Notes: generated from the sequence alone by a model not told the origin. A DNA stretch of 64,000 nt from Mytilus californianus (GCF_021869535.1 NW_026262745.1:32736001-32800000), one strand, 5' to 3'; positions 20,934 through 59,380 are shown, counted from the stretch's first letter. Program-made: numbers and translations.

Positions 20934-23900
20934 TCAACCTGTGAAGTTATCTCTGTAAACAAAAAGAAAGCTATACAATACCTTGAAATATAACAGAACT
21001 GACGCGCGTGTTTATCGGTTGTATTAAAACAGTAGTTCTTTTTTCAATGAGACTAACATACTTACCGTATGTAATTGACAACGAACACACCGACTAATGG
21101 GAGCAATAAAGCACACACCACCACATAAGCTATCCATATATAGTCAGGTCTTTCACCTAAATAAATAAGAATCGTATTACTTCCCTACAATATTTGTCGT
21201 AAGTATGTAAAGGGACCCTTGAACTTATTGTTTTATTTTTCTTATATGCACTACTGATACTAAATAATTATACTGAATACATAACATGTATAGCGAGCTT
21301 ATTGTTTTTTTTAAATTTTTTATACACTGTTGCTTTAAAAACCATTCATGGTCATTTTTTGGTTTATATTACAAGAAAATGACATATTAGATTTAACTTG
21401 TCGCCTAGATGTCTTTTATGGAAATTCATATCGTTGTGGTGTTGTTTCATTGATGTATACCCCACATTTAATTTCATTTCCTATAAAGATTTACTTAATT
21501 TCTGAATAAAAAATAATCATAGATGCTTTTTATGAAAAGACAAACATAAAGGTAAATTCAAAACTATTATCAACTTACGAAATACTTCGATAATGAATAT
21601 GTCCATAGGTCGTCTTTGTTTATGCCTATTATATTTGTCTTTGAATAAATTTCTTGTTCGTGACAGAATTTTGGTAGTCTTTCTTAAATTTTTGCATTTT
21701 TGATTAAATGTATTTTTGTATGTCATGGCTACCAGTTTTTATTTGCGGAGGAAGCCGGTGCTCCCTAAATAGATCCACCAACCTTCAGCAAGAAAACATC
21801 TTTGTCAATCAAGATCGGAGTCGAACATACCTCGCCACTAGCAGTGTTCGAACTCACAGACTGTGTGTTGACAGGATAGTGATTACTGTAGAAAAAACTA
21901 CCAAGACCATTCGATCACCTATTTTTATAAAATGTATAATAATAGAAACTGGCCTATCATTATTGCTAAAGAACCGTATGATTTTCCATGGCTTTTTTTT
22001 TCTGTTTTCAAATATGTTTAAGAGTTGATGTCCCTTGGGCTTACATCCTATCTGTTTTCGTCTAAATCTTTACCACTAATAAAAAATGTTACACCAAGTT
22101 GATTTATACACACAAGTGTAAATTTATGACTAGATGTATACATATATCCCTACTAAAAATTAAAGAATTTTATACTACTAATGTACTAAAGTTCATACCT
22201 TTTACTTTTGAATATACGTTTGTGATGTTTGTAGTACTGGAAACGGTGGAATTTTCTGCAATAAAATAACATAAAGTAAAACCGGGATTAAAAACCGTAT
22301 ATATAAAACTTCCAGGAATTTACTGATATAAAGACCAGCAAAACAAAAAGTACTGTTTTTTTAAGTGGATTAATTGATTGATTGATTGATAACCATGATT
22401 GATTGATTGTTGCTTTTAACACATGCAGTGTCAAACGTTTCATGTTTATTCAGGACTAGAACAAATTAACATTAAGTACAATAGGAAGGATGACTGGGAT
22501 GTAAGGTTTGAAATTTGGACTTTGATGGATACGGACAGAATTTGTACCTTGCAGCATGCAATCTACGGACCACATCAAAGGTTCTTCAACGTACAGAAAG
22601 CGTGCGTGGCGCTCATCCGTCACGGGGCATCGTATTTAATGTCCTTATTACGATCAGAAGTGGCTGCGAATTTATAAATCCCACACAACCAAACGGAGGC
22701 CCCTCTTAAGCAAAGATTTGACTGCCGGATGAAAATACCTCGTCACGAATAGGGTTCGAACTCACAAACTCTGTGTTGACAGGATAATGATTACTGTAGA
22801 AAATACTATAAAAATTAAAATTACAAAAATGCCGAACTCCAAGGAAAATTCAAAACGGAAAGTCCCTTATCAAAGGGCAAAATTAAAAGCTCAAACACAT
22901 CAAACGAATGGAAAACAACTGTCATATTTCTGACTTGGTACAGGCATTTCCTTATGTAGAAAATGGTATATTAAACCTGGTTTTATAGCTAGCTAAACCT
23001 CTCACTTGTATGACAGTCGTATAAAATTCCATTATATTGACAACAATGTGTGAACAAAACAAACAGACATAATAGGTAAAAATGTCAAAAATAGGGGTAC
23101 AGCAGTCAACAGTGTTTTATAATCTTAATCACTATAAAACCAAACAAATATGTCAACAAAGAAAAACAAAATGGCATATAGACAAAGCACATAAGCAAAC
23201 ATGAAAGACAAGAACACAAAAAATGATCAAATCACAATAACACAATGGCGGGATGTATAAATACCGAGCCACGCCAAAAGGATATTACCAAAATGGACTA
23301 AACAGTATATGTTAATCATTTACAAAGACAAATAAAATACAAAGACAAACAATATAACACTTAATTAAGATCATAAACAACATCAGTACCTAGAATCTAT
23401 ACATCAAGACCGTCCTGTATTATTTGTGAATTTGATACGGAATACTTATCAACTAGGTCTTAGTATCTTCCGATGAACTTTTCTAGAAAAAGGACGAGAC
23501 GTTCTTTGAAATAACCCTGGTTCATCAACTTTCTGCTCAAACACTGATGACGTTTTATAAAGTCTAAGTAGTAGCTGTAAGCTCTGGAATACCGAATGAG
23601 TTGGGAAATGTATATCCCATATGCAGGTGATGTTAGTATATTGCTACTAAGGTGGGGGAAATTGATAATTTCAAAATTAAAACCAAGACCATTCGATCAC
23701 CTATTTTTATTATTGCTAACGAACCATATGTTGTTCCATGAAATTTTTTTCTGTTTTCAAATGTGTTTAAAGTTGATGTCTCTTGGACTTAAATCCTATC
23801 CTTTTCCGTCTAAATTTTTACCACTATAAAATGTTAAACCAAGTTGATTTTTACACACAAGTGTAAATTTATGACTAGATGTATACATATCTCCCTACTA

Positions 23901-25249
23901 AAAATTAAAGAACTGTATACTACAATTGCATTGAAGTGCATACCTTCAACTTTTGAATTTATGGTTGTGTAGCTTGTAGTACTGGAAACAGTGGAACTTT
24001 CTGTAATGATATAGCATAAAGTTTAACCTGGACGAAAACCGTATATATAAAGCTTGACATAGGTATACTAAACAATCGTTGTTTATATAAGAATTTACTG
24101 ATATAAAGACCAGACCAGTAAACAAATTTTTTTTTCAAGTAGATTAATTAATTAATTTCTTGCTTGCTTGCTTGATTGATTTTTGCTTGTCTAACGTTCA
24201 ATGTCAAATGATGCATGCCTATGCGGGACTAGAACGAATTGATATTAATTACAATAGAAAGGTTGACCGGAATGTAACGTGGGACATTTTCGCTTTGATT
24301 GATACGGAAAGAAATTGTACCTTGCAGCATGCAACCTACGGAGCCCAGCAATTTTTCGCACGTACAGAGATCCTGCGTAACACTCATCCTTCACAAGGCT
24401 TTAGCTTTAACGTCTTCATTCCAACCAGACATTGATGTGTATTTGTACATCGCACCCAACCAAACGAACACCCTCTTTAGCAAAGGTTTTACTGCCGGAA
24501 GGGCGAATCAAGGGATGACCATATGTCTATACCCCAATCTACCCTAATTTGTTGTCACATAGTAATAATTACTTGGTGCTTCGTGTTGATTGGTTGCTGT
24601 TTCATTTATGTATACACCAAATCTATTATTTTTCATATATAGAATATTAATGTCTTCACAGTCATGTAAATAAATGCAAAATAATTTCAGATAAGTTGTT
24701 GGGTGATATCAGTGGTACTAAAGTTTGATTGATTGATTGGTGTACACGCGACTTTTAGCACTGTTGGCTATTTTGTTGCAGAAAGTTTTTATTAGTGGAG
24801 GAAGCCGGAGTGCCCGGAGAGAACCACCAACCTTCGGTTGGAAAACTGACAATCCTAGTCAGTGAATATAGGCGTCGAACGCACCTGCCACATGCGGGAC
24901 TCGAACTCACAACCTCAATGTTGACGGGCTAGTGTTACAGTAGTTGAAAACAAGTACATGGGCCACTCTTTTTAAGATAACATTTTGTTTTCATTATGAA
25001 GATTATTTAAACCAATTTTTTTAAGAAATCACATTTTTTTTAATTAGATAAATATACAGCGAAAAAAAAAATAACACATTAATATAAAAGAATTAACACC
25101 AAAGTTTGAATTTAGATTTTAATTGAATTTAAATTTTAAGTAAGATGTTAATTGAACGTACCTGTTGTAGCTCCATAGCAATTTATTATAAACGTAGATG
25201 AAAGTAATATCAGGGAGAAAGGCATATAAATTAAATCCATAGTCATCAT
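20934..25249 (-). CDS. Small type-I membrane mucin-like protein, array copy 1 (103 aa); exons 25249-25162, 24000-23944, 22255-22199, 21156-21066, 20952-20934
   Basis: All introns GT-AG, phases 1,1,1,2, 312 nt total. MMTMDLIYMPFSLILLSSTFIINCYGATT-ESSTVSSTTSYTTINSKVE-ENSTVSSTTNITNVYSKVK-GERPDYIWIAYVVVCALLLPLVGVFVVNYI-RDNFTG*. Close paralog is copy 2. Confidence 0.8.
22809..23682 (-). mobile_element. Penelope-like element 3' fragment inserted between the duplicated stalk exons of copy 1
   Basis: Near-colinear with 44070-44930 and includes the NFEIINFPHLSSNI coding remnant. It interrupts gtagaaaatacta|ccaagacc, which is contiguous at 21890-21910. Confidence 0.75.
24740..24960 (-). mobile_element. 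tRNA-derived SINE (V/Meta-like core)
   Basis: Core ggaggaagccggagtgcccggagagaaccacc and minus-strand B-box-like gtgagttcgagtccc. Related copies near 21740-21900, 30630-30710 and 62900-63110. Confidence 0.55.
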
Positions 25250-25799
25250 ATTAGAGCCATAACTGATTTAACAAAATCATAACTTCCTTATTAAATAAAT
25301 TTCTAAATATATTCTTTCCATTGTTTCTAACAAATGAGCTCTAACGTGGAAACATTCCAAAAGTTATAAAATTAAATAATCCGGTTCAAGGTAATGAGCT
25401 GGATCCATATGGAACAGATGACAAAACCGTATAATCATTTGTTGATTACGATATGAATGTGCCATATAATTTACACTTGTCTTCTTTTGTTCAAACAATG
25501 AATTCCCTCTAGCAAAATCAAACTAAATATATAAAAACGATAATGCATTTCATTTATTTTCTATTTACCTATATCCCTGTTAGGAGATTTTAATTACATT
25601 CAAGTTAACATATAGTGGTGAAAAACTTCTAAAAAGAAGTCTGTTTGTTTGGCCATTTACACACAGTGTATCTGTCAACTTGTTTGACTTTTATTTGGTA
25701 AAAGTGCTAATTCACTAAGTTTAATAGTTTATTTCAAGCTAGAAGCAATACAGCCTATAGGTTTATCAGAAATATAGACCTAACTTATTTCAAACAGAA

Positions 25800-25880
25800 T
25801 AGCACATCCTAAATTTTACGGTGATGTTGTTTACCGAGCCCGGAAATTTAGTTACGATCCGGGTAAACTTATCAATCCTT
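25800..25880 (+). mobile_element. Short Penelope-like C-terminal fragment
   Basis: Reads HPKFYGDVVYRARKFSYDPGKLINPL, similar to the 56330-56520 fragment. Confidence 0.5.
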
Positions 25881-27828
25881 TATATAATTTTTTTTGGCGC
25901 ATATACGAATAAAAAAAAACAAGGTTTACTAAAAATTAAGTCGACAAAGTGATAAGAATTATCTAGCTGATCACAAAAAAGACTATGCACTATATGAGGG
26001 TTTGGTTTCTGGTTTGTGTGCTTGAATACCGAGTCTGCACAGATGTATAGCTATATATTATTATATTTATAAGACATGTGACGAAAAGGGTATGAAAGTG
26101 AGATGTATAGAGAATAAAAGATTTTCTTGAAACAAGACTCGGAAAGTTATGTGTTCATTCCTTTTCTTTCTTATCTTCGTTTTGCTGAGTTTTGAATTGT
26201 AGGTTTTCATACAATTGTCAGGTCATAAACATAATCTAACGAAAATACTTTTTAAGTTATTATTTGTGACATTTTCAGCATCTTTAGATAGGTTGATAGC
26301 GGTACACGTTTTTTTCTGAAATTGTCAGATAATTCTTAATTTTTTCATCTATTTTTTCGCAGGATCTACTTAACCTTTCCCGAGCACCTAAAATATCCCG
26401 GCTGATTTGAGAGAGGGTCGAAAATCTGAATCTTTAATTCTCTTTGTTTTGTAGACTGTGCATCGTTTTTCTTTTTCTTTTTGCCGTTGGGCAGACTTAA
26501 AATATTTGATTGTCCTTTTGACCCTTTGATGTCTTCTGGTTCCTTTTTCTTCTTTTTGAAACAAAATTTCATGAAAAGATTTCTATAAAATAGAATTAAA
26601 AGTGATAGTTTTCTGTTGAACACCAGCTGTTAATATTTCAATTGGTCTTTCTATATCGTCCGTTTAATGATAACTCTTCATATGACACCAATGGGCTTAT
26701 GCGTGCGCATATTCACGAATACCCGTTGAAATGCTTTTTCCCGTTTTATGATTATTTGACAACTACCATCAAACTTATTCATAACTATGGAGAAAATTGA
26801 TCAGTGTGCAACAGTTAATCAATTTGATTTAAAAAAGTAAACGCGCATAGCATATTATAAGGGACATAATCAAATGAATGACTGGTTTAGATTCATTTAA
26901 AAATGTTTAAAAATCCAATCAAAATGTTCGCTTTATGCATCTTGTTCTTTACTTAAAAAAAAAACACAAATAACAATGAAATTTATACAAAATAATAAAT
27001 TTTGATTTTATTTAATACCTATTTGAAATTCTCCAAAATTTCATTCACAAATGAATACAATAAATAAGACACCCAAGTAAATAAAGTATTTGGATTACGT
27101 TACACTAGTATGTTTACGCTTTTTCAGGCGTATCTTTTTCTTGCTTGTCATCTCGCCTTACTCTGAAATAATTGAATAATTATATTACATTTATAATGTT
27201 TATAATCTTGAAATGTCATATATATATGTTTTTATTTCCAAATGGTAGTTCAAAGTCATATAAGGCATATTAAAATAAGTATATTTATAAGAAAAAACAA
27301 TATTTTGCATCAGACAAAGTTGACCTTATATGAATTAGGCTATTATTTTAGGCGCCTTTTGGTCATATAGGTCTTCATTTGTATTTGTACTAATACATCC
27401 TTGGCGTTAAAATTTTTGGTTCTGAGCGTTCGTGATGAAGGTAAATCCAGAAATTGTAATCCCTCGAACAGAGCATTGGTGATTATATTGGCGGCTCGGG
27501 GTGTATACGGTGTGAAATTGAAAAAGCCATATGAAATTCTCAAGGTACGGATTTAGGATTTTGATAAAGGGGGTGGGGCAAAAACAAGGCAACGTTAGGA
27601 GTGAGACTTGTAATAAGTGTTTGCGTTTTAGCTCTGGTGGTTAGTTGTCTCATTGGCAATCAGTTGGCACATCTCCTCATTATTATTTAACAATTATGTA
27701 TTAAGATCCATGGCCTCCTCTAAATCCGCATATGTTCTCTATTGTATTGCTTTTTGGTGCTAAAAAACTTGAGATCAAGTTCAGCAGATTTTATCTAGCC
27801 TTATAATACTTTTCAGCAAGAAACATAA

Positions 27829-30800
27829 TCAACCTGTGAAGTAGTCCCTGTAAACAAAAAGAGAGCTATACAACTACCTTGAAATATATCAGAAGTGAAG
27901 CGTGGTTACCGGCTGTATTTGAAAAAGTAGTTCCTCTGTCAAATAGACTAGCAGACTTACATTATGCAATTGACAATAAACACAACAACTAATGGGAGCA
28001 GCAAAGCACACACCACCACATAAGCTATCCATATAAAGTCAGGTCTTTCATCTGAATAAATAAGGATGATATTTCTTACCTACAATACTTGTCGTAAGGA
28101 TGTAAAGCTTTGTTTTTATTGTTCTTATATTAAATGATCTACTGCCTCTAAACAATTATTTTGAATACAAAATAAAACCTGTGTGTTTATTGTTTATTTT
28201 TCTAAAAGTGTCTGTATTGTTGCTATACAAACTGTAAATGAACATGTAATGGTTTTAAACATGCAAAAAATACACTTTTTTGTTCTTACCAAGCATTAAA
28301 ATTAGTATGACCTCGCAGATGTCTTTTTTTATTTATCTCGTTTTTTTGCTGTCTCATAGTGATGTATATACCCCAACTCTGTTTTTATTTCTTAGATAGA
28401 TTCACTCAATTTCTAAAACATAAATTCATAGAAAGTTTTTCGGGTAAAATGGCAATTCTTTGTCAATCAAGATTGGAATGAAACACACCTCGACACGATC
28501 GAGGTTCGATCGTATTCCTATAACATATGACCTCGGGGGCATTAATGTCTACATTGTATTTCTATTCATTTCTGATATTTTCTTTTCACTTATTTTGCTA
28601 TTAAATTTTTTTATTGACTATATTTTTACTATCAATGTGCACCCCATTAAAAAATGAAAATATAAAAATGAAAACGTTAAAAATTGAATAAGAATGTGAA
28701 GTCATATGTTATAGGACTAATTTCAACTCTGTATTAATTGATTTAAATCTTAGATAACATTTTTTTCCCTTTGTTAATTTTATCAGATAAAACAGACCCA
28801 TCACGGGTGAAATAAGGTCTAAGTATAGTAAAGTAAAATTATCGCTTTTTTTCCCCCGTAAAAGAGGACATAAGAACGCAAACAAAACCTTATTTATTTT
28901 ACTATTCACAAAGGCATAACCTATAAATATGATATTGTATAGTATTGTTATGGCTTTTTTCATTTGAAACAGAATTTCAAAATGCAATATCACAGCCGTT
29001 ATTCTCTTCTCATCTCACATAGGAGTAACATGATTCTAGTTACGTGTTTTCATAGTTCACATGTATGAGAAAATACAGTATGTTGCATAGGAACCAATTA
29101 ACCCTGTAGATTTTCTTAATATTGAATAGTCAAATATTAATGTAACAGATGAATTAATCAATAAATTAATAATAAAACCTATAAAACATATTTGACAGTC
29201 TGTAGGAAATCATGCCTGTTATCTGTTCTTTGGTTGTATTCAGCGTTACTTCAAGTGGTGTGAGTGTTGCTTCATGTGTTGTATTCAGCGTTACTTCAAG
29301 TGTTGCTTCATGTGTTGTATTCAGCGTTACTTCAAGTGTTGTGAGTGTTGCTTCGTGTGTTGTATTCAGCGTTACTTCAAGTGTTGTGAGTGTTGCTTCA
29401 GTTATTGTGAGTGTTGTTTCAGACTGAATAACTGAAAAGAAAATAAACGGTTATGGAAAATATGAAAATATTTTTGAGAGAAGCTTATCAATTTAATTCT
29501 TATTAAGTCAGACATTCCTTTTATAATAAATGCATTTCAGAATGCAGTTACTCTTTTTTTTCTTTCTGTTTATAGAAAACTAGGAATACAAAAACTTTTG
29601 ATTTTTTGTTTCGTTAGCTTTTTAAGTAAACGATATCAACCTGTAAAAATATATAAAATTTCGCTTTTTTTAAAAATCATTTTAATTTTAATTCACTCTC
29701 GTAACCACATAAAAAATAATGTCCACAGAATGGATCCTACGCTAACCGTACATATCCAATGTCTTTTCTAAAACTTATTTAGAATAATCTATTATGTTAG
29801 ATACGGAAGAAGGATTTTTCGTTATAACAATCTGATGTTAACAAATTATTATATTAAAGTATTGAATGAAAATTGATTTAACTAGATATAAGAAGATGTG
29901 GTATGAGTGCCAATGCATTGTACGGAATAACTAAACAATATTTTCATCATTGTACAACAGCTCCATGTGTTTTTAGAGCTCATAAGTTTTTTTAGCCTGA
30001 TAAACACCAGTAAACAAAACAGTACTGTTTTTTTCAGGCATTTGTTTGATTGATTGATTGGTGATTGTTGTTTGCACAACTTTCAATGGCAACTGTTTCA
30101 TGCCTATTCAGGACTAGAACAAATTAACACTAAGAACAATAAAAAGGTATACAGGGATATAAGGTCTGAAATTTGGAATTTGATGGATATGGACAGAAAT
30201 TGTACCTTACAGCATGCAATCTACGGCCCCTAGCCAGTTTTCGCAAAGGTTCTTCGACGTAGAGAAAGCGTGCGTGGCACTCATCCTTTACGTGGCATCG
30301 GCTTTAACGTCCTCATTTCGAACAGACGTGGCTGCGTATTTATACATCCCAAACAATTAAACGGACGCCCCACTTTAGCAAAGATTTTACTGCCGGACGG
30401 GCGAATCCAGGAATGACCATATTTCTACACCCCAATCACCCCTAAGGGTTTGTGACATAGTAATAATTATGTGGTGCTTTGTGTCGTTTGGTTGCTGTAT
30501 CATTGTTGAATACACCAAATCTATTATTTTTCATATATAGAATATAAACGTATTCACATTAATGTAAATAAATCCAAAATTATTTCAAATAAGTTTGATG
30601 TGAGATATGTATTAGACTTAAGTTTGATTGGTTGATTGGTGTTTAACGCCACTTTCAGCAGTGTTGGCTATATAGTGGCGTTTTTACTGGTGAAGGAAGC
30701 CAGAGCAAATGATTTTTCTATGTATCCGTCTATTATATTTTAATAAATAAACGCATTCAGAAGGTTAATTTTCTGTATTAAGTCAATCATTTTGTTGACT

Positions 30801-32218
30801 TTTGAAGCCCAAACTTTCTATTGCTTTAAATGCGCTAATGAGAGATGGAAAAACGATGCCAATACAGACATATAGGTTTTTGAACTTCTAACAAAAAGTT
30901 TGGGTGATGAGTGTTTTGTAGTATTAACAAGAAATTGCATTTTCTCCCTACCTCTCATTTTACCCCTTAACACTTAATTTGATATGGACTGTTTATTGTT
31001 GTTAAATCTTACGCATTTCTATTTGATGAAGTTATAATTACTTCACCATTTATCTGTTTACCTGTTCAAATTTGTCCTGTGTGTATTCTGTGAGCACGCA
31101 AAATTTTATTACGTAACAATAATTATTGTTTATGAAGACAAGGACATTAAAGGCGTCAAGGATGGCAACTCTAGATCCGAAATGTGGCCTTATTTACACC
31201 ACAAATACACTCTGAGTGCAGGCGAACCTGTGCACCTTGAAAAGTTTTAATGCATGACAGGAACTAGATAATTAAATTCTAAATGCATTTAATGTTTTGG
31301 TAAACTATAAACTTCACTTGCTTTTGAGATTCCTTTTTTTTTGTTCCCACAGAAGGTGTCAAAATAAACTAAGTTTGGAATGAAACTCATGTGTTTGTTT
31401 AATTTATCACCGTCTGTAGGCTTAAAAAAAGGAATGTCAAATTCTATGTAAGTGTTTAATTTTCTGAATCATAAAATGCATTCAGATTTTTTTAACCTAT
31501 TTCCTGCCATTCCTTTAAACTTTTCCAGGTACACAGGTTAGTCTGCACTCTGTTGTGGAGTAAACAAGGAGATATTTTACAATTCCTTCTGATGAACCTT
31601 TTTTGTTAGATAGATTAGATAAACAGTAAACAAGCCATTTTTTAAATCGTGAAGATTATATATAAAAGAATTACTCCCATAAAATTGCTACACAAATATA
31701 GAGCATACTAATGTAAAGAAGATATTTCAAATGTTTTTTTTTTACAAAAATCTGGGTGCTTGTGTTTATCTTAATAAAAAATAGGTATCTTCCTGAAGGA
31801 TTGAAATTTCCAAGAAACCAAAGTTTTGATTAGAATCTAAAATTTCGACCCCATTTATCTCTAAAAGTAGCACAAGAAGAAATATTTTCTATTACATACT
31901 GTATTTGAATTGACTCTGTGAAAAATAGAGTGTACGCAATTTTTCGTTAAAAAAATCACCGTGAGATGAAAACTGTATCGTATGCCCTTAATGAAAGTTA
32001 AGTTTGACGTATGATGTTATGGAAATTAGCTTTGACGTAGAATATTTGACGTAAGATAACAATGGAAGTTAAGTTTGAAATAAGATTTTAATGGAACTTA
32101 AATTTTACGTAAGATATTAATTGAACGTACCTGTTGTATCTCCATAGCAATTTATTATAAACGTAGATGAAAGTAATGTCAGGGAAAAGGGCATATAAAC
32201 TAAATCCATAGTCATCAT
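27829..32218 (-). CDS. Small type-I membrane mucin-like protein, array copy 2 (137 aa); exons 32218-32131, 29431-29216, 28051-27961, 27847-27829
   Basis: Phases 1,1,2, 414 nt total. MMTMDLVYMPFSLTLLSSTFIINCYGDTT-VIQSETTLTIT(EATLTTLEVTLNTTH-type repeats)...KEQIT-DERPDFIWIAYVVVCALLLPLVVVFIVNCI-MDYFTG*. Signal, TM and tail exons have the same lengths as copy 1 (88, 91, 19 nt). The stalk exon needs a GC donor (CAG|gcatga). Confidence 0.72.
29225..29420 (-). repeat. Coding 45/36-bp tandem repeat in the copy 2 stalk exon (EATLTTLEVTLNTTH)
   Basis: About 4 units, all of length divisible by 3, Thr-rich on the minus strand, with four N-T-T sequons. Confidence 0.85.
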
Positions 32219-35945: not shown

Positions 35946-35959
35946 CCTTTGGCTTTCCA

Positions 35960-39146: not shown

Positions 39147-39549
39147 TCTATACTACTAAAATAACGAGGTCCAATTTGTTAACCGGCATGACGTAAAAAC
39201 GACAAATCAAAGAATTCAACTTTATATTTAACTAATATAGGACAATGGTGTTGATAAAAAATTACACCATTCCAGACCCCTTTGTTTTCCATATAATTAA
39301 TATTACCAGTAATTTACAAGTTCCGGGTCGAATCCGATATCAATTGTATATTTCACATGTAGTTTCTGGTTGAAGTAAGAAAACAGGACGGGTTCAAACA
39401 GAAAGATTTTGAAAGCAGAGAAAACTGTGCACCTTATAAGCAGAATGACTTTGTCAGATGACAAGACGAATACTAAAAATCTAGGCTAAAAATAAGGTGT
39501 AGGTACTTTAATTCAGTCACGGACCCGCGATGTCGCGGGTGTGTTCTCG
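39147..39549 (+). mobile_element. Non-autonomous Helitron-type element
   Basis: 5' TC start (tctatactactaaaa), perfect 8-bp hairpin acccgcga-tg-tcgcgggt at 39523-39540, and a CTCG (degenerate CTRR) end a few nt later. Confidence 0.7.
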
Positions 39550-40314
39550 TAGTACCTGAATATTAACTAACAATGGATCACTACGATGTTTTATAATGTA
39601 AAGGCAACAAAGAGTTAAAGACATTCAGTTTTTAAGAGATGCAGCATAGTGTGTAGTCATTCTGAACAAGTCTTGTCTATCATGATACCATCTTAAGTTT
39701 GATTTATTTTGAGGTGTAATTTTTCAAGAGAAATGTATATATAGCTAAGGCAAATTTATAGATCTAACATTGTTGGGCTAATTTAAGACAAATTATATAT
39801 TGTTGTTGATATATTAATAACTTTTGATTATTAGGACAGTTTATATTTTGAATTAAGAAATGTACAAAGAGGTAAATAGAAATAAATAGATTTCAAAGTA
39901 ATAGACCAGAGCTCACGGTTGATTCATACCCTGATTCCTCTTATTGCATTTAAGTTGCAAAATCCATGTTTTGCAATCGGAAAGCCTAAAGATAAAGAAT
40001 AGTAGTGTTTTGGGAAGAATTTTTTCAATAAAATGACATGGTAAACACTTGTATTCTTTAAGTTCTCTTTTACGGACCTTCAAGTCTTAGGTTTTATTTG
40101 GACTTTTTCAAACTGTCACAAATCCGAATTTAGAACATAGTTCTATCTTAAAGTCAAATAATTGTAATTGATCGAATTTTGTTTTGTAAATATATTCCAT
40201 TATACTTTTAACAAAACAACAAAATGAAGATGAGAACAATAATCTACCACCAATCGAAATTTCACAAAGTTCTTTGATATGAACATCCTGATGAACGTAT
40301 GATATGTTTTTTCT

Positions 40315-43300: not shown

Positions 43301-43394
43301 ATAAAACATATATATTAAAGGTAAATATAAACACGATACCTGTACTTATACAAGCTAGTATATTCCATGCAAGAATTAATTCATGATGTTCCAT
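40315..43394 (-). CDS. Small type-I membrane protein, array copy 3 (82 aa); exons 43394-43340, 42579-42532, 41653-41563, 40369-40315
   Basis: All GT-AG, phases 1,1,2, 249 nt. MEHHELILAWNILACIST-AFTYNTSSTIAPPEVE-GSSADLSWLIIVILAAFLLAIIIPAGICLG-RRRWRAGKNMTTTTKTSK*. Exon 1 is the least certain (weak signal peptide). Confidence 0.72.
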
Positions 43395-44069
43395 TGTAAT
43401 CCTTTCATTCTGTAATCTTTTCTAGTTTCTGTTTTTCTCAAGTCATAAACACATTATTTAGATAGTGTTACACGTGATTGCATATACAGTTGATCTCTTG
43501 CCATTAAATATCGAATATCGATCAATGAATTTAAAATATATCACTTTTTGTACACAATTGTGAATGATTATTGAAACGGTAAATACTAATAATGTTAACC
43601 CGTGTCTCTGTTCGCTATTACCGCACCATAGACTATTTAATAACAAAATCGTAAAAATATTATTAGTTTTACATTTGTTATTTTAATGAATTATTAATCA
43701 TACACCACAGACTTCCACTGAAATAAAGTAAATCAATGAATGCATAATCTAATTGTTATAAATTTCTCTCTTAGAGCAGGTACATATCAGGTATGGATTG
43801 CATTGGTCACATAAGCATTATAACTCTCTGTAAAATAATGAGCAGAAAATACCAAGGATACAATCAAAATCACAAATTGAAGGAAAAACAACATTATGAG
43901 AGTTCAGTACTATTTGGTAGAGGGGTCTAATGGGGTCTTAATAGTTGCTCTTGTCTTAATCATTCAATGGTTATAGCATGTTATTCTAATTCAGAACTAG
44001 TTTGAAATTCTAAACTTTTCATTGAACCGTCTACACAGTAATTATGCTTCTAAATAAATATCGGACTGA

Positions 44070-46380: not shown

Positions 46381-46399
46381 ACTTGTATCTGTATTCAAT

Positions 46400-50035: not shown

Positions 50036-53000
50036 CTACCCGCCTCGCCTTCTCCTAGTGATAAAATTATAGAAATAAATGCAAGTTAACCTAGAATATC
50101 CCTTTGGTATCTTTTGGCCAAATGTATGAATTTACATTCTGTTCTCTAATGTATATTTAGCTATATGTTCTAGCAATCATAAAATAAAATGTTGTGTGCT
50201 GTAGGTGTTTTTTTTATATTGTGTTAATAAAGATCCTGAAATCCAGTGTTTGCCTATAGTTACTATCTGTCAACAATGTTTTTCCTTTATCCTTGTATCA
50301 CACATAAGGCTGTTTGTTTTCTCTTTTGAATTGTTTCGCATTTTATTATAACAAGAATTTTTTATAGCTTTCTATACATTGTTGATTTTTTTAGGCCTAC
50401 AGGGATCTGAAATTGTTCACATCTGTGTCGTTTGGTCTTTAATAAATAATTTTCTCATTGTCAATCATTCCAATTATTCTTTTTTTTTTTTTTACATTTT
50501 TGTTTGACTCTGTAATGTTTTGGCCAAATGCGAATACAGAAAAGCGCACCATAGTGATTATACTATCATATAGTTTCCATGCACCCGAGATAAACTAACA
50601 TTGTATTAAATCATACCAGGAGATTAAAACATTGTGATCCGGAGATTTTTTGTTTTAGACATTTTTTCGCTAAAATACTGTAACATAGTCCTCAAATATT
50701 AAACAAGGATAATCTCAGAAATAGTATTCGTCAAGCCTCGATGATAAAATATATGTCATCACAAAATGTGACAAGCTTTCAGTTTATACACTTGTAATCC
50801 TTCGGTAATCTTATAAACATGACAATTAGCCGAGGTATCCAAAGCACTTACTTCCTACCATAGACTAGTAAGGGTTTTGCTCATTGTTGAAGGCCGTACG
50901 GTGACCTATAATTGTTAATTTCTGTGTCATTTTGTCTTTTGTGGAGAGTTGTCTCGTTGGCAGTCATACCACATCTTCTTATTTTTATATAGACTAATTT
51001 TGGAAAAAATTATAAACCGATCCTTAGAGGTTTTCTTTATTTTCCTTACCATGAACCATAGAAAACATCATTTTCAACTAATATCAACTTACCTTACAAT
51101 CAAAACTACACGTGTGATCACACCAGCAATGAATAAAAGTGCAAAAATGATACCAGCAATTAGCCATGTGTGTTTGGTATTCAGAGAATCTATACAGATA
51201 AAAACAAAACAAATAATAATACAGTCTTTATATAAAGAAACTCCTACCACTTTACCCCCTTAAACAAATTTAGAATGTCCGCAGCTGTGGTAATATCAAG
51301 CTGAGTATATATGATAAGTTTTACCGTAATGAAAGATGAAATGCTATAAATTGATTCTCTGTATTGTATTTACAAAAGAGAGGCGAAAGATACCAAAGGG
51401 ACATTTAAACTCATTAGTTGAACATAAACTAACACTGACAACGCCATGGGAAAAAAATAAAGGGGAAAGACCAGCAGACAAACTTTAACTTTTATTTCTG
51501 CTACTTTTATTCGCCGAGAGAAAAGTATTTAAAATAGTAACGGATAAATAAATTATTTAATTTGCTTGAATTATTGAAGGGTAATACCTCATTGTTTTGT
51601 AAACGATAATGATATTTCAAATACATATTCATACTGGACACATACCGAATGAGAATAAAGCTGTAAAATAAATATAACACTCTATTTTCTGGTGTCTTAA
51701 GCGCTTTTCTGTAAAAACTTTAATCAGGAACATTGAAATCCAAAAATTGAAAGCCAAGGTTGTATAAGGGAACGACCATTTAACTTCAAGGGGGCTTATG
51801 GTTTTTCCTAAAAAAATATATTCTGATCCCCAATTTGATGAAAAAATATTGTGGTCAAGCAGATGACAAACAAAAAAAAATATTCTAAATCCAGATTTCC
51901 CCCATACCTTATAGTGTTAAAATTTAAAAAAAAAAATAATTTGATTGATAGCGTCGAAAAGCTAAAAAAAAAATCTGACTCGGACAAAAAACCATAACCG
52001 CCCCCCCCCCCCACCCCCCCCTGAAGTTAAATGGTTGCTCCCTAAAAACCTAAATAGGAGCTACACATAAATATTTGTTTATATGTCCGAAAGTGGAACT
52101 TAAAGGAAATGCCAAATTCGTCTACGATCAACTTTACCTGAGAGAGTGTGAACCTTTGTTCCTTAATAATGAAATTATATACCTTTAACGTGAGGTGGTG
52201 GTGGTGGTGATGTACTGGGTATGTCAGTAGTAAAAGCTACAATGAAACGCATATATGTGATAACTATTTTGAGACCTGTTATATCTACATAGATCGAGGG
52301 AAAAAAACAAAGATCGTAAGAGATGTATTTATCAAATAAAAAATCAGGTCTTTCACATTGCTCCGTTTGATTTGTTTTTATCGGCACGTTTCACAATGAC
52401 TTTACTCCGTTAGATTTGTTTGTAGCGGCATGTTTCCATGTGACTTTGCTTCGTTAGATTTGTTTTTGTAGCGGTGTGTTTCACTTTGCTTCGTTTGATT
52501 TGTTTGAAGAAGCATGTTTTACATTGCTCGGTTAGATTCATTTGTAGCGACATTGCTCGGTTAGATTCATTTGTAGCGTCATGTTTCACATTGCTCGGGT
52601 AGATTCGTTTGTAGCGGCGTGTTTCACATTGCTCCGGTAGATTCGTTTGTAGCAGTCGTGTTTCATTTTGCGTCGTTTGATTTGTTTGAGGAGGCGTGTT
52701 TTACATTGCTCTGTTAGATTCGTTTGTAGCGTCGTGTTTTACATTGCTCGGTTAGATACGTTTGTAGGGTCGTGTTTTACATTGCTCGGTTAGATTCGTT
52801 TGAAGCGTCGTGTTTCACATTGCTCCGGTAGATTTGTTTGTAGCGTCGTGTTTCACATTGCTCCGGTAGATTCGTTTGTAGCGTCGTGTTTTACATTGCT
52901 CGGTTAGATTCGTTTGTAGCGTCGTGTTTTACTTTGGTCTGTTAGATTTGTTTGTAGCGTCGTGTTTTACATTGCTCCGGTAAATTCGTTTGTAGCGGCG

Positions 53001-54047
53001 TGTTTCACTTTGCTCCATGAGATTTGTTTGTCTCGAGGTGACTTATCTATTCTGAAAGATATTGCATAAATTATGCCCCCTTTGTATATACGTTTTTTTT
53101 AATGATATTCAGATCGTTATTTGCAAAAGTACGTAAGAAACGAGTGTGTCATTTTTCTTAATTCAAAACATGTAATGAAAGCTGGTGATTGCAAATATCC
53201 GAGTTGATTCCTATTATTATAATTATTTGGTTGTGTTAAAAACTGTGTGTTCATTTAAAAAGTGCGTTTCGTCTACAAAAGACTCATCAGTAACGCTCGA
53301 TTTAAAAAAGTTGAAAAGACCAAATAAAGTACGAAGTTGAAGAGCATTAAGGACCCAAAATTCCTAAAAGTTTTGCCATATAAAGCTAAGGTAATCCATT
53401 CCTGCGGAAGAAAATCCTTAGTATTTCGAAAAATTCAAAGTTTTGTAAACAGTTAATTCATATTTATGACCATCCATATCAGTGATAATTCATGTCAATA
53501 TAGAAGTGCTGACTACTGGGCAGGCGATACCCTCGAGGAGAAAAACTCCACCAGCAGTGGCATCGACTCAGTGGTTGTAAATAAACTCATCAAAGATACC
53601 AGGATTGAAATTTTGTACGCCAGACGTGTGTTTCGTCTACAAAAAACTCATCAGTGACGCTCCAATCAAAAGAATATAACCAAATTTTCCACAATTTTTA
53701 ATATAACGTATATATGAACCTTGAACGGCTATGATTACAGTGTGGTTTGAATACTTAGAATTGCATTATATGCAAATTTACTTTAATGTAAATACAAGGA
53801 AAACCAAATAAAAAACAAGCAAATCTGAAATAAATCTACGTCAAATGTTCTGTTGCAGGCATACGCCATACCGTCATTTGCCTGATCATCAGACAGTTAA
53901 ATCAACCTAAGATAAAGACAGGCTTTCTGATATTTCACGTTACTACCATGATGTAAAAAAAAGGTTATAAGTCTTACCGTTATCCGCCAGACCACCACTT
54001 AGTAAAAATAGAAGAATTATCAAAAAGTTATAGTACACCATCATCAT
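50036..54047 (-). CDS. Small type-I membrane protein, array copy 4 (79 aa); exons 54047-53978, 52236-52183, 51189-51093, 50054-50036
   Basis: All GT-AG, phases 1,1,2, 240 nt. MMMVYYNFLIILLFLLSGGLADN-AFTTDIPSTSPPPPPHVK-DSLNTKHTWLIAGIIFALLFIAGVITRVVLIV-RRRRGG*. Exon 2 start (ttgtag|CTTTTACT) and exon 4 start (tag|GAGAAG) are identical to copy 3. Confidence 0.8.
50870..50985. repeat. Representative copy of the most abundant short interspersed repeat (ttgttgaaggccgtacggtgacc...gttgtctcattggcaatcataccacatc)
   Basis: Recognisable copies or parts near 7220, 12440, 18770, 35220, 40690, 43070, 57550 and 63350, in both orientations. Confidence 0.85.
51768..52042. mobile_element. MITE with about 25-bp TIRs and TAA target-site duplication (PIF/Harbinger-like), in intron 2 of copy 4
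   Basis: taa|gggaacgaccatttaacttcaagggg ... cccctgaagttaaatggttgctccc|taa. Confidence 0.8.
52351..53030. repeat. 38-bp tandem minisatellite (ttacattgctcggttagattcgtttgtagcgtcgtgtt), about 18 units, in intron 1 of copy 4
   Basis: Direct 38-nt periodicity, more homogeneous toward the 3' end. Confidence 0.92.
53262..53662. repeat. About 400-bp interspersed element bounded by a 37-bp direct repeat (gtgcgtttcgtctacaaaagactcatcagtgacgctc)
   Basis: Repeat copies at 53262-53298 and 53626-53662. Partial relatives near 60760-60870. Confidence 0.6.
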
Positions 54048-54864: not shown

Positions 54865-55330
54865 CTTGATGATATTTTTTCGTTAAATAATCCAGAGTTC
54901 TCTAAATATACTACCGGAATTTACCCAAAGGAACTTACTTTGAATAAATCTAACATAAACAGCAGTAGTGTCCTTTTGTAGATTTAGACATTCCAATTTT
55001 TAAAGCGAAACTCCATACTAAAATTCACAACAAAAGAGACGATTTTTATTCCCTATTGTTTAATTTTCCTTTTTTAGACGGCGATGTTCCTTTGGCTCCA
55101 TCATACGGTGTTTATATATCCCAACTCGTTCGTTATGCCCGTGTGTGTAGTGATGTCATATATTTTAACGAACGTAATCAATGCATCACTGGTAAATAAT
55201 TAAGTCAGGGATTTCGTTACCATAAATTACTTAAAACTTTTACTAAATTCTTTCATAGATACAAAGAGTTGATTAGTAAATTTGGCTGTACCTGTAGAAA
55301 ACTTATTAAAAACGATATTTCACATCCTAA
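54865..55330 (+). mobile_element. Penelope-like RT C-terminal fragment; continues at about 56330-56520 after intervening insertions
   Basis: DDIFSLNNPEFSKY...YPKELTLNKSN...KRDDF...NFPFLDGDVPLAPSYGVYISQLVRYARVC...KTFTKFFHRY; continuation SNIVLKARKALCDPCKLIEPLNKLISKGY. Confidence 0.85.
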
Positions 55331-58300
55331 AGGATATTTGGCCCCGATTATAAAGTTCAATGTTGCAAGATGAAAAATGTTTTAAGTTGACTTAAAGACA
55401 TGTGAGAAAGTTAAATAGAACTTGTTGTGTCAAATATTTATTCTAAAGCGTTGATTTTTACATCCCAAATAGGTCAAGATACGAGATTTTGGCGAAATTT
55501 GACAAAATCGGTCGGTTTTCAACCAAAATTAGGAACAGGAAACATAGAGCACAGGCGTCGACAAACTAAATATTCAAGTTAGAAATGTAAAATGTCTATA
55601 CAAACATTGTTTCAAAAGATCTTTTTTGTCGACGTATGCGCTCTGTGTTTCCTGTCCAATAAGTAATGCAAATTTGCCGATTTTCTTTGATTTTTTCCTG
55701 TTGGTGACCTTCTGCTGTTGTCTGTTCTATGGTCGGGTTGTTGTCTCTTTGACACATTCCCCATTTCCATTCTCAATTTTATTTTTTACAGAGTTTGTCT
55801 TTAGTGCCGTGTGGAGACAGTAGAGTGCCTCCCCATGCTTCAGGTTTATGCTCTTATAATATACTAGATTATGGAGTGTGTGTCCGAGCGAGAACTTCTT
55901 TAGTTCATTACTTTAGGAAACCCCGCCGCATTTTTGCGCCTGTCCCAAGTCAGGAGCCTCTAGCCTTTGTTAGTCTTGTATTATTTTTAATTTTAGTTTC
56001 TTGTGTACAATTTGGAGTTTAGTATGGCGTTCATTATCACTGAACTAGTATATATATTTGTTTAGGGGCCAGCTGAAGGACGCCTCCGTGTGCGGGAATT
56101 TCTCGCTGCATTGAAGACCTGTTGGTGACCTTCTGCTGTTGTCTGTTCTATGGTCGGGTTGTTGTCTCTTTGACACATTCCCCATTTCCATTCTCAATTT
56201 TACTATTTGTGACGTCAGGAATAAAATGTAAGTACGTAATTTTTTTCAAAAGTCTTATTTCCTATCTAGTCACTGTATTAGCTATGATTATTGTGATATT
56301 GGTCAATAAATCCTTATTTGAAATTTAAGCTAAAAAACGGGGTCATTTTAGGGCCTTATCGAACCTACTCCTCTTACAGTAATATTGTACTAAAAGCGCG
56401 GAAAGCACTATGTGATCCGTGTAAACTCATCGAACCTTTAAACAAACTTATTAGTAAAGGTTATCTTACCAATGTTGTAATTAGATCTTTGAATATAGTG
56501 GCACTAACATCGATTTTGTCATCAGCAAATTAACACGTAACTAAATTTGTATTCTTTTCAACCGGTTTTTGGGATGTATAAATACACATCCACGTTCATT
56601 TTCTATATAGAGATTACTCTATCTATATATTACATTATACATATTTATCAACAGGTTAACTCCTAGCTATCCTACTTCATGTCGATACTTTTATTTTGGC
56701 ATTGCACAAGTCAAATGACGTTAAAACACTAAATCCCTGGGATGCTTTTTAGTTGATTTTAGTCTCTGCTGCATGATTTTTTATTATTAATTGTTTTTGG
56801 CTTTTAACTAGCTTTCAGTAACTGCGAGTACTCTCAAATCGTACTTTCGTGTTAATTTGACCTGTTGATACAATTTGTAATGTGTTTTTGTTATTTAATG
56901 TCTACTTATTTAGTGTTATATCTCGTCTCACTATTTTTGGTATATACCACCTTTGATAAGTGTTTAGTATGACGATAAATTTTCACTTTTGTTCTCGTAC
57001 TAGGTACAACAAAATTTTTTATTTTGTAAAAATTATTTCCGTACTCCATGTATACCTTACAACAAAAATTATTTTTATTTACCTGTGTACGTTATTTTAT
57101 TTGGCGGCATTTTGTCCAAGGTTATGGTTGTCTTTCTGATATTGTTTTACATCTAACCCCCGTGTTTTATTAATTTTGTATTTACATTGTGTCATAGATC
57201 AAATTTATTCGTTTAGTGTATGTTCACTTGTTTTTGTTAATATGTCTTTTGATTGAGTTCAGCCATTTCAATTGATATTTTATAGTGTGTCTTTCTATGT
57301 TGTGATGTTACACTATTGTTTCAGGTAGGGTGAAAGTTGGCGCCTATAAAAACGTTTAAACCCGCTGCATTTGTTTGCACCTGTCCTAAGTCAGGAACCT
57401 GATGTTCAGTGGTTGTAGTTTGTTGATGTGATTCATAAGTATTTCTCGTTTCTCGTTTTTTATATAGATTAGACTGTTGGTTTTCCTGTTTGAATGGTTT
57501 TACACTAGTCATTTTTGGGGCCCTTTATAGCTTGCTGTTTGGTGTGAGCCAAGGCTCAGTGTTGAAGGCCGTACTTTGACCTATAGTGGTTTACTTTTAC
57601 AAATTGTGACTTGGTTGGAGAGTTGTCTCGTTGGCACTCATACCACATCTTCTTATATCTAAGAATAGAATGGAAATGTTTTTCAAATATTCTCCTTGGC
57701 ATTTCGATATCTAATTTCTTTTAAATAAATGTCTATTTCTATTTAACTGAGATCAATTGCACTATTTATCAAGTCGTATTTGACATTACTCAACCAAAAA
57801 CTTGGTTGTTGATATGAATACTTCTTAAGAAAAACGCATTTTTGGAAAGAAGTTTCTTATTTACCAATTATTTGTTCTTTTCCATTTTATGTTCCAAAAC
57901 GTGATTAAACTTTCAAATAGTTTTTTTTTGCACGCCTTTACATAAAGTGTACATCTGATATATTTTCAAAATGTAATGCATACATCTATATCAACATTCT
58001 GTATTATTATCATAGCACTATTTTGTTATTTTGATTTTTAGGACATTTTATTTTTTGTATTAAGAAATGTATAAAGAGGTAAATAGAGAGGAATAGATTG
58101 CAAAGTAATAGAAAACTGTGAATAAAATAAAAAAAATATGTTTTACCATAAGATACTTAAAACCTTCTGACATGCTTATTGAAATCTACTCAGTCGGTAA
58201 GGATGAGCTGCCGATACAACACCAAAAGTGTGTGAGGACCAGCAAACGCATTAACGAACGAACGAACGGACGGACACAACTATCACTGTACATCCGATCA

Positions 58301-58999
58301 GGGAGGGGCATAGATCAATAGAAAAGAACTTGTTATCAAATAAATTACTATTTACATTTAAATACATAACAGTATGTATGATAATGAGAAACCTGACATG
58401 GTGCAGGGAAATAAATTAAGAACTTATAGACGGTTTTAAAATAATATTGGCCATGGATTATATTTACGGTATCATTACTGGTATATTTCAAGAACTTATC
58501 ATAATTTATTCAAGATTTCATTATGCATACTTAATTCTTCGTCATTTAAGTCTTCTTCTGGCATGAGTTTACTTATAAATTTATTTTCAAGGTGGAATAA
58601 ATAAGTGCAAGATTATACGTTTTGTAACTTTATGTGTTTTTCAGCTATGATACATGTAATAACTATAAATGAAAATAACTTCAACACAAGGAAAAGGTTA
58701 CTGTAAAACATTGTTCAATCCAATAATTTTATTTGCAAAGTACATATACATGTATCAAGTCAGCACTAAGAGAGTCTATCGCCAATTTTCCATTGATAGT
58801 CATTTGAGATTTTTCCAGATCTTGTACTGATACGTATTTTGGGGAAGAATATACCCATAGAATTACATAGTACACACATATATACCTTAAGTTCTCTTTT
58901 ACTGACCTTCAAGTCTTAGGCTTGTTTGACCATTTTCAAATTGTCATTAAAGCAAAATAAGAGCATGGTTCTATCTAAGAGTCAAATTATTGTAGTTGA

Positions 59000-59380
59000 T
59001 GTAAATATATTCCATTATATTTGAACAAACCAACAAAATGAAGATGAGAACAATTATCTACCACCAACCGGAATTTCACATAGTTCGATATGAATATCCA
59101 GATGAACTTATGATATGTTTTTTCTTCATTTTGACGTCTTTGTTGTTGTCATATTCTTTCCAGGATTTTTTAAAGGAGGCGTAATTCCCGAAAACAGGAA
59201 ATAAGCAGAAGATATACTGCCTACCGGAGCGAAGCGAAAAATATTTTTTTGTATTTTTAATTTTTATATTTTCCAATAAAAGGAGGCGTACGCCCTCTAC
59301 GACCCTTTGAATATACCACTGGCAGATCATATGTGTTTTTGTGGATTAATCAGGTCGGTTGTTTTGAATTGTTTCACATT
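59000..59380 (-). pseudogene. Array copy 5: remnant paralogous to copy 3, with stalk exon, TM exon and the start of the tail exon deleted
   Basis: 59000-59163 aligns to about 40190-40355 (tail GKNMTTTKTSK* retained, stop at 59126-59128). 59159-59380 aligns to about 42819-43040. The junction has TCCAG microhomology. Confidence 0.75.

What the first reader, a model, noticed from the sequence alone, without database searches (positions are those of the whole stretch)
20934..59380. Hidden tandem family of tiny single-pass membrane glycoprotein genes with a fixed exon-phase architecture and a variable stalk
Five minus-strand loci over about 38 kb share one design: signal-peptide exon (phase 1), S/T/P-rich stalk exon(s) (phase 1-1), TM exon of 91/91/91/97 nt (phase 1-2) with a Trp at the TM start, and a tail exon of 5-17 aa. 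Seen directly: canonical splice sites (one GC donor), open frames, and shared junction motifs (stalk ends PPEVE|G, PPHVK|D, SKVE|E, SKVK|G). The coding exons are 19-216 nt, so the ORF track shows only incidental read-through pieces. The proteins (79-137 aa) have no recognisable folded domain; the design recalls glycophorin or small sialomucins. Inference: a rapidly diversifying cell-surface family (glycocalyx, self/non-self or gamete recognition, or accessory subunits) with birth-and-death turnover. I cannot assign it to a named family.
Basis: partly seen in the sequence, partly recalled or inferred. Interest (0 to 1): 0.92.

Follow-up and report, generated by a model that had tools for sequence, protein, structure and literature searches.

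The report
Mussel cluster of tiny mucin-like genes
This is a real tandem cluster of four very small mussel (Mytilus) genes for single-pass, sugar-coated-looking membrane proteins plus one dead fragment; relatives are already annotated as "uncharacterized" in other mussel genomes, so it is an unstudied lineage-specific family rather than a hidden new kind of gene.

Summary
Three of the four gene models are backed by spliced RNA. Copies A and B (a 6.9-kb tandem duplicate pair) have annotated orthologues in M. edulis, M. galloprovincialis and M. trossulus, all named "uncharacterized". Copy C (82 aa) matches Logan mRNA contigs exon for exon. Copy D (79 aa) has no transcript evidence, but its exons, splice sites, reading frame and hydrophobic segment are kept in two other Mytilus species. 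The fifth locus is a fragment without stalk or TM exons.

Corrections:
The real last exons lie further downstream, and A's is at 18897-18837, outside the stated range. They encode conserved charged tails.
- A/B and C/D cannot be shown to be homologous; they share only the design.
- The Trp is not conserved in D orthologues.

No Pfam family is reached; TMEM154 scores below threshold. A profile search of 1.84 billion proteins finds only Mytilus relatives. The best reading is a fast-evolving, Mytilus-restricted set of small mucin-like type I membrane proteins. Their stalk length varies by a coding 45-nt repeat array, by exon gain or loss and by exon skipping. Function is untested. Interest is modest.

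The parts
25162..25249 (-). Copy A, signal-peptide coding exon (88 nt, phase 0-1, donor GTACGT)
   Evidence: Sequence. 69-73% identical in protein to the first exons of the Mytilus orthologues. Its junction to stalk exon 1 was not seen; it rests on the M. coruscus model P0010.
23944..24000 (-). Copy A, stalk exon 1 (57 nt, phase 1-1, ends SKVE)
   Evidence: Joints 21156|23944 (three runs) and 22255|23944.
22199..22255 (-). Copy A, stalk exon 2 (57 nt, duplicate of stalk exon 1; skipped in part of the transcripts)
   Evidence: Joints 21156|22199 and 22255|23944 were seen in run X1 only; the skipping joint 21156|23944 was seen in X1-X3.
21066..21156 (-). Copy A, TM exon (91 nt, phase 1-2)
   Evidence: A 90-nt RNA contig with no mismatch, depth about 100. 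91-92% identical to M. edulis and M. trossulus gene 2.
18837..18897 (-). Copy A, true last coding exon (20-residue tail ending PYGDL, then stop).
   Evidence: The same C-terminus is found in M. trossulus, M. galloprovincialis and M. coruscus proteins.
32131..32218 (-). Copy B, signal-peptide coding exon. By homology to mRNA L002 the exon with its 5' UTR reaches about 32564.
   Evidence: RNA contigs join it to 29431.
29216..29431 (-). Copy B, 216-nt stalk exon built of 45-nt (15-aa) Thr-rich repeats with four NTT sequons; GC donor (GCATGA)
   Evidence: Both junctions are seen as loose ends identical to 29402-29431 and 29216-29230.
27961..28051 (-). Copy B, TM exon (91 nt, phase 1-2)
   Evidence: 95.6% identical to mRNA L002.
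27114..27162 (-). Copy B, true last coding exon (tail VRRDDKQEKDTPEKA, then stop); 3' UTR to at least 27019
   Evidence: 94.5% identical to mRNA L002 positions 687-831.
43340..43468 (-). Copy C, exon 1 (5' UTR plus 55 nt coding, ATG at 43394)
   Evidence: mRNA contigs L004-L006, 99% identical.
42532..42579 (-). Copy C, stalk exon (48 nt, ends PPEVE)
41563..41653 (-). Copy C, TM exon (91 nt)
39492..40369 (-). Copy C, last exon (17-residue tail, stop ends at 40315, then about 820 nt of 3' UTR)
53978..54047 (-). Copy D, signal-peptide exon (70 nt)
   Evidence: Conserved with its donor in M. trossulus L003:2904-2973. No RNA evidence.
52183..52236 (-). Copy D, stalk exon (54 nt, ends PPHVK)
   Evidence: Conserved with AG/GT in M. 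trossulus, and in M. edulis with an in-frame 3-nt deletion.
51093..51189 (-). Copy D, TM exon (97 nt)
   Evidence: Conserved in M. trossulus (97 nt) and in M. edulis (88 nt, in-frame 9-nt deletion). Hydrophobic core retained, P about 0.01 under random mutation.
50036..50054 (-). Copy D, predicted tail exon (RRRGG, then stop). Prediction only.
   Evidence: The acceptor, a polybasic start and an early stop are kept in M. edulis and M. trossulus.
58029..59381 (-). Locus E: fragment homologous to part of C's intron 1 and to C's last exon; it has no exon 1, stalk exon or TM exon
20934..20952 (-).
   Evidence: No joint, and only background depth. Orthologues and mRNA use 18897-18837 instead.
27829..27847 (-).
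   Evidence: mRNA L002 and the orthologous proteins use 27162-27114.

Best explanation
The region holds a tandem, same-strand cluster of four very small Mytilus genes, in the order D, C, B, A along the minus strand, plus one dead fragment E. Each gene has 4-5 exons: a signal-peptide exon, one or two short Thr/Ser/Pro-rich ectodomain exons, a 91-97-nt exon with the juxtamembrane residues and one TM helix, and a last exon with a short basic or charged tail.

Shown: A, B and C are transcribed and spliced. A/B-type genes are conserved in position and sequence in four other Mytilus species. C is transcribed in a close relative, probably M. coruscus.

Inferred: the products are type I membrane proteins with a disordered, N- and O-glycosylated stalk, that is, small mucin- or glycophorin-like proteins of the secretory pathway or cell surface. 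Their ectodomain length is changed quickly by repeat-number change in a coding 45-nt array, by exon duplication or loss, and by exon skipping. The TM segment and the tail of A/B are kept. The A-type tail ends in a repeat-derived YGDL, which looks like a YxxO sorting motif and may direct endocytic traffic; this is speculation. D is probably a functional, fast-evolving paralogue of C.
For: - Exons, phases and splice sites were read directly from the sequence.
- Spliced RNA exists for A and B in three runs of the window's own organism.
- mRNA contigs exist for B-type (L002) and for C (L004-L008).
- Orthologous annotated proteins exist: P0001, P0002, P0005, P0006, P0007 and P0009.
- Synteny in the order D-like, B-like, A-like, then a gene on the opposite strand holds in M. 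edulis, M. trossulus and M. galloprovincialis.
- Invariant ERPDY.WIAYVVV and VRRD..QEKE blocks, with dN/dS of 0.4-0.6 for TM plus tail.
- The AlphaFold model has a signal helix, residues 27-104 below pLDDT 50, and a TM helix.
- NxS/T sequons and a high S+T content.
- Atlas look-alikes are glycophorin A, MUC21, TMEM154, SMAGP and CRB3, all under 0.9.
- D keeps its frame, splice sites and hydrophobic core.
Against: - No protein-level, glycosylation or localisation data exist.
- No transcript or database protein was found for D.
- dN/dS is about 1.2 for both C and D, on few differences.
- C's N-terminus (MEHHE...) is a weak signal peptide.
- A's exon 1 to stalk 1 junction was not seen, and contigs run unspliced through that intron at low depth.
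- Common ancestry of A/B and C/D is not demonstrable.
- The raw RNA run X21 showed no expression of A.
Confidence: 0.75

Rival explanations
1. There are two unrelated gene pairs, not one family. A/B and C/D arose independently and share only the generic design of animal type I membrane protein genes: a phase-1 intron after the signal peptide, 1-1 ectodomain exons and a separate TM exon. They happen to lie side by side.
For: No significant nucleotide similarity between A and C or D for the TM, signal or tail exons, whereas C versus D is highly significant. hhalign probability is 5%. From general knowledge, phase-1 introns after signal peptides and 1-1 exons are common in extracellular proteins.
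Against: The pairs share strand and adjacency. A, B and C have the same 91-nt TM exon length, with Trp at the same (8th) residue and Asp at the 5th. Sub-threshold TMEM154 hits occur for both types. The stalk starts are similar: DIHSTIP in P0001 against DIPSTSP in D.
Confidence: 0.35
2. D is a decaying pseudogene or a non-coding locus. Its open frame persists by chance.
For: RNA runs of the window's organism hold only 1-3% of the locus words. No protein in 5.8 billion shares words with its TM exon, and no gene is called at the syntenic place in M. edulis or M. trossulus. dN/dS is about 1.2.
Against: All six splice sites are kept in M. trossulus. Both indels in the M. edulis stalk and TM exons are multiples of 3. 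The hydrophobic core is kept despite 14 substitutions, joint P about 0.01. The polybasic tail and early stop are kept in three species.
Confidence: 0.25
3. The exons belong to one larger gene. C, B and A are spliced into a single 368-388-aa product, as in the M. coruscus models CAC5371931.1 and CAC5371932.1.
For: P0010 and P0011 concatenate the C, B and A sequences in that order.
Against: Separate mRNA contigs exist for C, with about 820 nt of its own 3' UTR, and for B, with about 340 nt of its own 5' UTR that is contiguous with the genome. The M. edulis, M. trossulus and M. galloprovincialis annotations call separate 122-148-aa genes. The fused model translates B's 5' UTR and would place signal peptides inside the protein.
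Confidence: 0.06
4. The proteins act in internal membranes (endosome, lysosome or Golgi), for instance as small accessory or regulatory subunits, and not as cell-surface glycocalyx components.
For: The ectodomains of C and D are very short, about 23-28 residues after the signal. The A-type C-terminus YGDL resembles a YxxO sorting signal (the motif reading rests on general knowledge). Atlas look-alikes include adaptor or anchor-type proteins such as DAP10 and PRIMA1.
Against: B-type tails lack the motif. The Thr-rich repeats with NTT sequons are typical of exposed mucin-like stalks. Nothing here tests location.
Confidence: 0.2

Closest known systems
Annotated but uncharacterized Mytilus proteins: M. 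edulis XP_071126287.1 and the 148-aa P0002; M. galloprovincialis VDI24432.1, VDI24436.1 and XP_076071804.1 (LOC143043317); M. trossulus LOC134696534; M. coruscus CAC5371931.1 and CAC5371932.1
   Same: These are orthologues of copies A and B, and for M. coruscus also of C. They have the same exon order, the same invariant juxtamembrane/TM block and tail, and the same neighbours.
   Different: Stalk composition differs. The M. edulis, M. galloprovincialis and M. trossulus genes carry the repeat-array exon plus one short S/T exon. Window A has two short exons and no array; window B has the array only. Repeat number differs. The M. coruscus models fuse three genes.
Glycophorin A and small sialomucins (MUC21/epiglycanin, CD164-type)
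   Same: A short type I membrane protein with a signal peptide, a disordered Ser/Thr-rich glycosylatable ectodomain (in B with tandem repeats), one TM helix and a short tail. They are feature-level look-alikes in the Atlas, scoring 0.85.
   Different: No sequence or Pfam similarity. These proteins are much smaller than mucins. Glycosylation is unproven. The family is restricted to one bivalve genus as far as HMMER can see.
TMEM154 family (PF15102)
   Same: The best recurring Pfam similarity. It covers the ectodomain plus TM in A-type (23.2 bits, E 6.6e-5), P0004 (18.6 bits), P0005 (12.8 bits) and C-type (13.1 bits).
   Different: Every single protein is below the 30.3-bit gathering score. Only the artificial triple fusion P0010 exceeds it. 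P0001 and P0002 give no hit. The match may reflect Thr-rich composition plus a TM helix.
SMAGP and Crumbs-3 type small type I membrane proteins
   Same: Size (80-130 aa), a short ectodomain, a single TM helix and a short tail. They are the top Atlas look-alikes for the C-type protein, scoring 0.88.
   Different: Scores are under 0.9, so these are leads only. No Pfam hit, and none of their conserved tail motifs were detected.

Membership tests
Mytilus A/B-type orthologue group (VDI24436.1, XP_071126287.1 and others) | Significant full-length sequence similarity, including the ERPDY.WIAYVVV TM block and the VRRD..QEKE tail | tested here: met
   tblastn of P0001 and P0002 on the window hits the signal, stalk, TM and tail exons of A and B. 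The profile search gives E of 1e-38 to 1e-53 among members. Alignment.
Mytilus A/B-type orthologue group | Conserved genomic position (tandem pair next to an opposite-strand gene) | tested here: met
   Collinear blastn of L001 and L003 with the window. Called genes.
C-type 82-aa protein (Logan P0012-P0015; N-terminal part of M. coruscus CAC5371931.1) | Near-identical protein and identical exon junctions | tested here: met
   78 of 82 residues identical. mRNA contigs map to 43468-43340, 42579-42532, 41653-41563 and 40369-39492.
Glycophorin A (PF01102) | Match to the family profile at its gathering score | tested here: not met
   No hit even at E<=10 for P0001, P0002, P0004, P0005, P0006 or P0012.
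TMEM154 (PF15102) | Match to the family profile at its gathering score (30.3 bits) | tested here: not met
   The best single protein scores 23.2 bits (P0006). The others score 18.6, 13.1 and 12.8 bits, or give no hit.
Mucin-like type I membrane glycoprotein (functional class) | Signal peptide, Ser/Thr/Pro-rich disordered ectodomain, single TM helix, short cytosolic tail with basic stop-transfer residues | tested here: met
   Assembled proteins. AlphaFold model of P0002: helix 3-25, residues 27-104 below pLDDT 50, helix 111-147.
Mucin-like type I membrane glycoprotein (functional class) | Actual N- or O-glycosylation and surface exposure | not testable with these tools
   Only sequons and S/T content can be counted.
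   Nucleotide Smith-Waterman scores are no better than shuffles for the TM, signal and tail exons. hhalign probability 5%, P 0.0075, aligned in register. The 91-nt exon length and the Trp position are shared.

The most novel reading that the evidence does not exclude
The cluster is a Mytilus-restricted, rapidly turning-over set of surface mucin-like proteins. Their stalk length polymorphism (a coding 45-nt array, exon gain or loss, exon skipping, and copies present in some species only, such as C) would be under diversifying selection for pathogen-decoy, self/non-self or gamete recognition. That would make it part of the mussel's dispensable, presence/absence-variable gene set.
Probability: 0.12. 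Interest if true: 0.55.

Novelty: new member of a known kind. Interest (0 to 1): 0.3.

Why it matters
The finding shows that very small multi-exon genes, which ORF scans miss, can be recovered from raw sequence. Three of the four models held up against RNA. It also corrects the models: it gives the true last exons of A and B, shows that the M. coruscus models fuse three genes, and identifies one locus as a fragment.

Biologically this is a compact example of how a lineage-restricted membrane protein family changes its ectodomain. The routes are a coding minisatellite, duplication or loss of a 57-nt exon, alternative skipping, a working GC donor, and a C-terminus taken from an interspersed repeat. 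Without functional data it is a modest addition to mussel genome annotation, not a new kind of system.

Tried and rejected
There is no joint and only background depth there, and the orthologues and mRNA use other exons.
- A search for a D-like signal exon upstream of C found nothing above shuffles. C's real exon 1 is unrelated in sequence to D's.
- A word-indexed protein search with D's TM exon found no candidates.
- Rfam on the whole window gave no family.
- Literature searches for the accession numbers, the run numbers and for Mytilus mucin-like transmembrane proteins found nothing relevant.
- Pfam on the ORF pieces at 44.6-46.4 kb gave no hit, so the 'Penelope-like' label of the repeat was not verified.
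- The exact look-up of P0001 and of the fused model P0010 found nothing on record.
- I did not send spliced window proteins to the database tools because they have no reference. I used stop-free read-through stretches and database orthologues instead.

Full report
**What is in the sequence**

The window is AT-rich (about 32% G+C) with no N runs. On the minus strand I found four hydrophobic exons that start with Trp. All have AG acceptors and GTAAGT donors and are phase 1-2.

Phase 1-1 stalk exons end in SKVE (24000-23944), SKVK (22255-22199), PPEVE (42579-42532) and PPHVK (52236-52183), each followed by G|GT. Copy B has a 216-nt stalk exon (29431-29216) made of 3.9 copies of a 45-nt unit, followed by GCATGA. 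Signal-peptide exons lie at 25249-25162, 32218-32131 and 54047-53978.

A and B are a roughly 6.9-kb tandem duplicate pair, 75-80% identical. Inside A, a unit carrying the stalk exon was duplicated.

**RNA evidence in the window's own organism**

RNA runs X1-X4 hold 34-42% of the words of locus A but only 1-3% of locus D. I laid 20001-26000 on X1-X3 and X21.

- Contigs join 21156|22199, 22255|23944 and, in all three runs, 21156|23944, which skips stalk exon 2. All are GT..AG on the minus strand.
- Two loose ends are letter-for-letter the start (29402-29431) and the end (29216-29230) of B's repeat exon. The first is attached to a signal exon that carries B's diagnostic differences. The second is attached to a TM exon that starts with B's A instead of A's G.
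- B is therefore spliced signal, array, TM, and its GC-AG intron is used.
Depth there is about 7, against about 100 on the TM exon.
- A's exon 1 to stalk 1 junction was not seen. Low-depth contigs run unspliced through that intron.
- X21 (raw RNA reads) shows no expression of A.

**Relatives**

A stop-free stretch around B's stalk exon found M. galloprovincialis and M. edulis proteins. Further searches added M. trossulus LOC134696534, an A-type group (VDI24432.1, XP_071126287.1, XP_076071804.1) and a Logan mRNA product, P0004. All are named uncharacterized or hypothetical.

The matching exons in the window are B 27162-27114 and A 18897-18837. mRNA contig L002 maps to B as 32564-32128, 29434-29216, 28053-27964 and 27163-27019.

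A's last exon carries a roughly 105-nt insertion relative to B. The insertion (18761-18854) belongs to an interspersed repeat with at least 15 copies in the window. It supplies the last six codons, PYGDL and the stop. The same C-terminus is present in M. trossulus, M. galloprovincialis and M. coruscus, so the insertion is old.

**Copy C**

The cluster of P0004 also contains four 82-aa Logan proteins and two M. coruscus models of 368 and 388 aa. Their mRNA contigs map to 43468-43340, 42579-42532, 41653-41563 and 40369-39492. This confirms the weak-looking first exon (MEHHE...) and the 17-residue tail.

The M. coruscus models are C+B+A run together. They translate B's 5' UTR, whereas separate transcripts with their own UTRs exist, so I take them as an annotation artefact.

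**Copy D and locus E**

M. edulis (L001) and M. trossulus (L003) are collinear with the window from D through B and A to a conserved opposite-strand gene. M. galloprovincialis has the same B-like, A-like, opposite-strand gene order.

- D's exons are present in both species with AG/GT kept.
- M. edulis has a 3-nt and a 9-nt deletion in the exons, both in frame.
- The predicted tail keeps a polybasic start and an early stop.
- The Trp is Gly in both species, and the Arg inside the window's hydrophobic run is not conserved.
- dN/dS against M. trossulus is about 1.2. However, random mutation of the TM exon keeps a stop-free, equally hydrophobic, polar-free core in only about 1% of trials.
- No gene is called there in either annotation, and no database protein shares words with D's TM exon.

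C's stalk and TM exons are significantly similar to D's (z about 8-11) but were not found in L001 or L003.

E (58029-59381) matches part of C's intron 1 and C's last exon only. It is a fragment.

**One family or two**

A/B against C/D gives no significant nucleotide similarity. hhalign gives a probability of 5%, although the alignment is in register. The shared features are strand, adjacency, exon phases, the 91-nt exon length and the Trp position. The phase pattern is generic for animal secreted and membrane proteins (general knowledge). I leave common ancestry open.

**What the proteins look like**

The assembled products are A 117 aa (98 aa when stalk exon 2 is skipped), B 147 aa, C 82 aa and D 79 aa. 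NxS/T sequons are present in A, B and C, and S+T content is high.

AlphaFold on P0002 gives a signal helix, a low-confidence segment at 27-104 and a TM helix. No Pfam family reaches its threshold. TMEM154 recurs below threshold, with a maximum of 23.2 bits against a cutoff of 30.3. Atlas look-alikes are glycophorin A, MUC21, TMEM154, SMAGP and CRB3, all under 0.9. A profile search of 1.84 billion representatives finds only three Mytilus proteins. dN/dS for the TM plus tail of A/B is 0.4-0.6 and for the signal exons 0.5-0.9.

**Verdict**

This is a real cluster of small mucin-like type I membrane protein genes, restricted to Mytilus as far as can be seen. It is already present in public annotations as uncharacterized proteins. 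Function is inferred from design only.

The window's species is a Mytilus close to M. coruscus. This is an inference from 97-99% identity of the coding exons.

Noticed in passing
window 18761-18854 (also 50894-50987, 43089-43185, 12430-12498, 7234-7323, 57569-57655 and others): A short interspersed repeat with at least 15 copies in the 64-kb window, in both orientations. One copy sits inside copy A's last exon and provides its last six codons and the stop. The insertion is flanked by sequence that is contiguous in copy B.
   Followed up: partly
window 20001-20230: Very high, strand-biased RNA read depth (about 420 against 4.5 in X21; word depth above 13,000 in X1-X3). About 95% of the reads run on into unlike sequence. 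This looks like a copy of a highly expressed repeat, or a fragment of a gene located elsewhere, lying in A's last intron. Two tandem copies exist in M. edulis (L001:22345-22741).
   Followed up: no
window 52405-53031: A 38-nt minisatellite of 16.5 copies in D's first intron. The array is also present at the syntenic place in M. edulis (L001:5-1065). The period is not a multiple of 3 and the array is not coding.
   Followed up: partly
window 22811-23680 and 44069-44927: An element of about 870 nt, 86% identical between its two copies. One copy lies between A's two stalk exons and the other upstream of C. RNA word depth is very high at 22801-23200.
   Followed up: partly
window 36202-37020 (+): A 272-aa ORF with a weak, sub-threshold Ty3 capsid-like match and a CCHC-like end. 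It is probably an LTR-retroelement gag remnant between B and C.
   Followed up: partly
window 15186-16951: The stretch best conserved with M. trossulus (88.6% over 1766 nt, L003:28981-30726). M. galloprovincialis has an opposite-strand gene of 432-524 aa at this position.
   Followed up: no
window 21517-21726 (-), and joint 21918|22199 in run X1: A minor alternative exon between A's stalk exon 2 and its TM exon. The M. coruscus model CAC5371932.1 includes the corresponding 21 residues (DKYNRHKQRRP...). One low-depth contig splices stalk exon 2 to 21918.
   Followed up: partly
M. coruscus CAC5371931.1 and CAC5371932.1 (P0010, P0011): These public gene models fuse three neighbouring small genes (C, B and A) into one 368-388-aa product. 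This also inflates the product's TMEM154 Pfam score above threshold.
   Followed up: yes
window 28711-28419 against L001:14700-18395: Window copy B lacks the short S/T stalk exon that M. edulis gene 1 has at L001:15841-15885. About 3.7 kb of the M. edulis intron has no counterpart in the window.
   Followed up: partly
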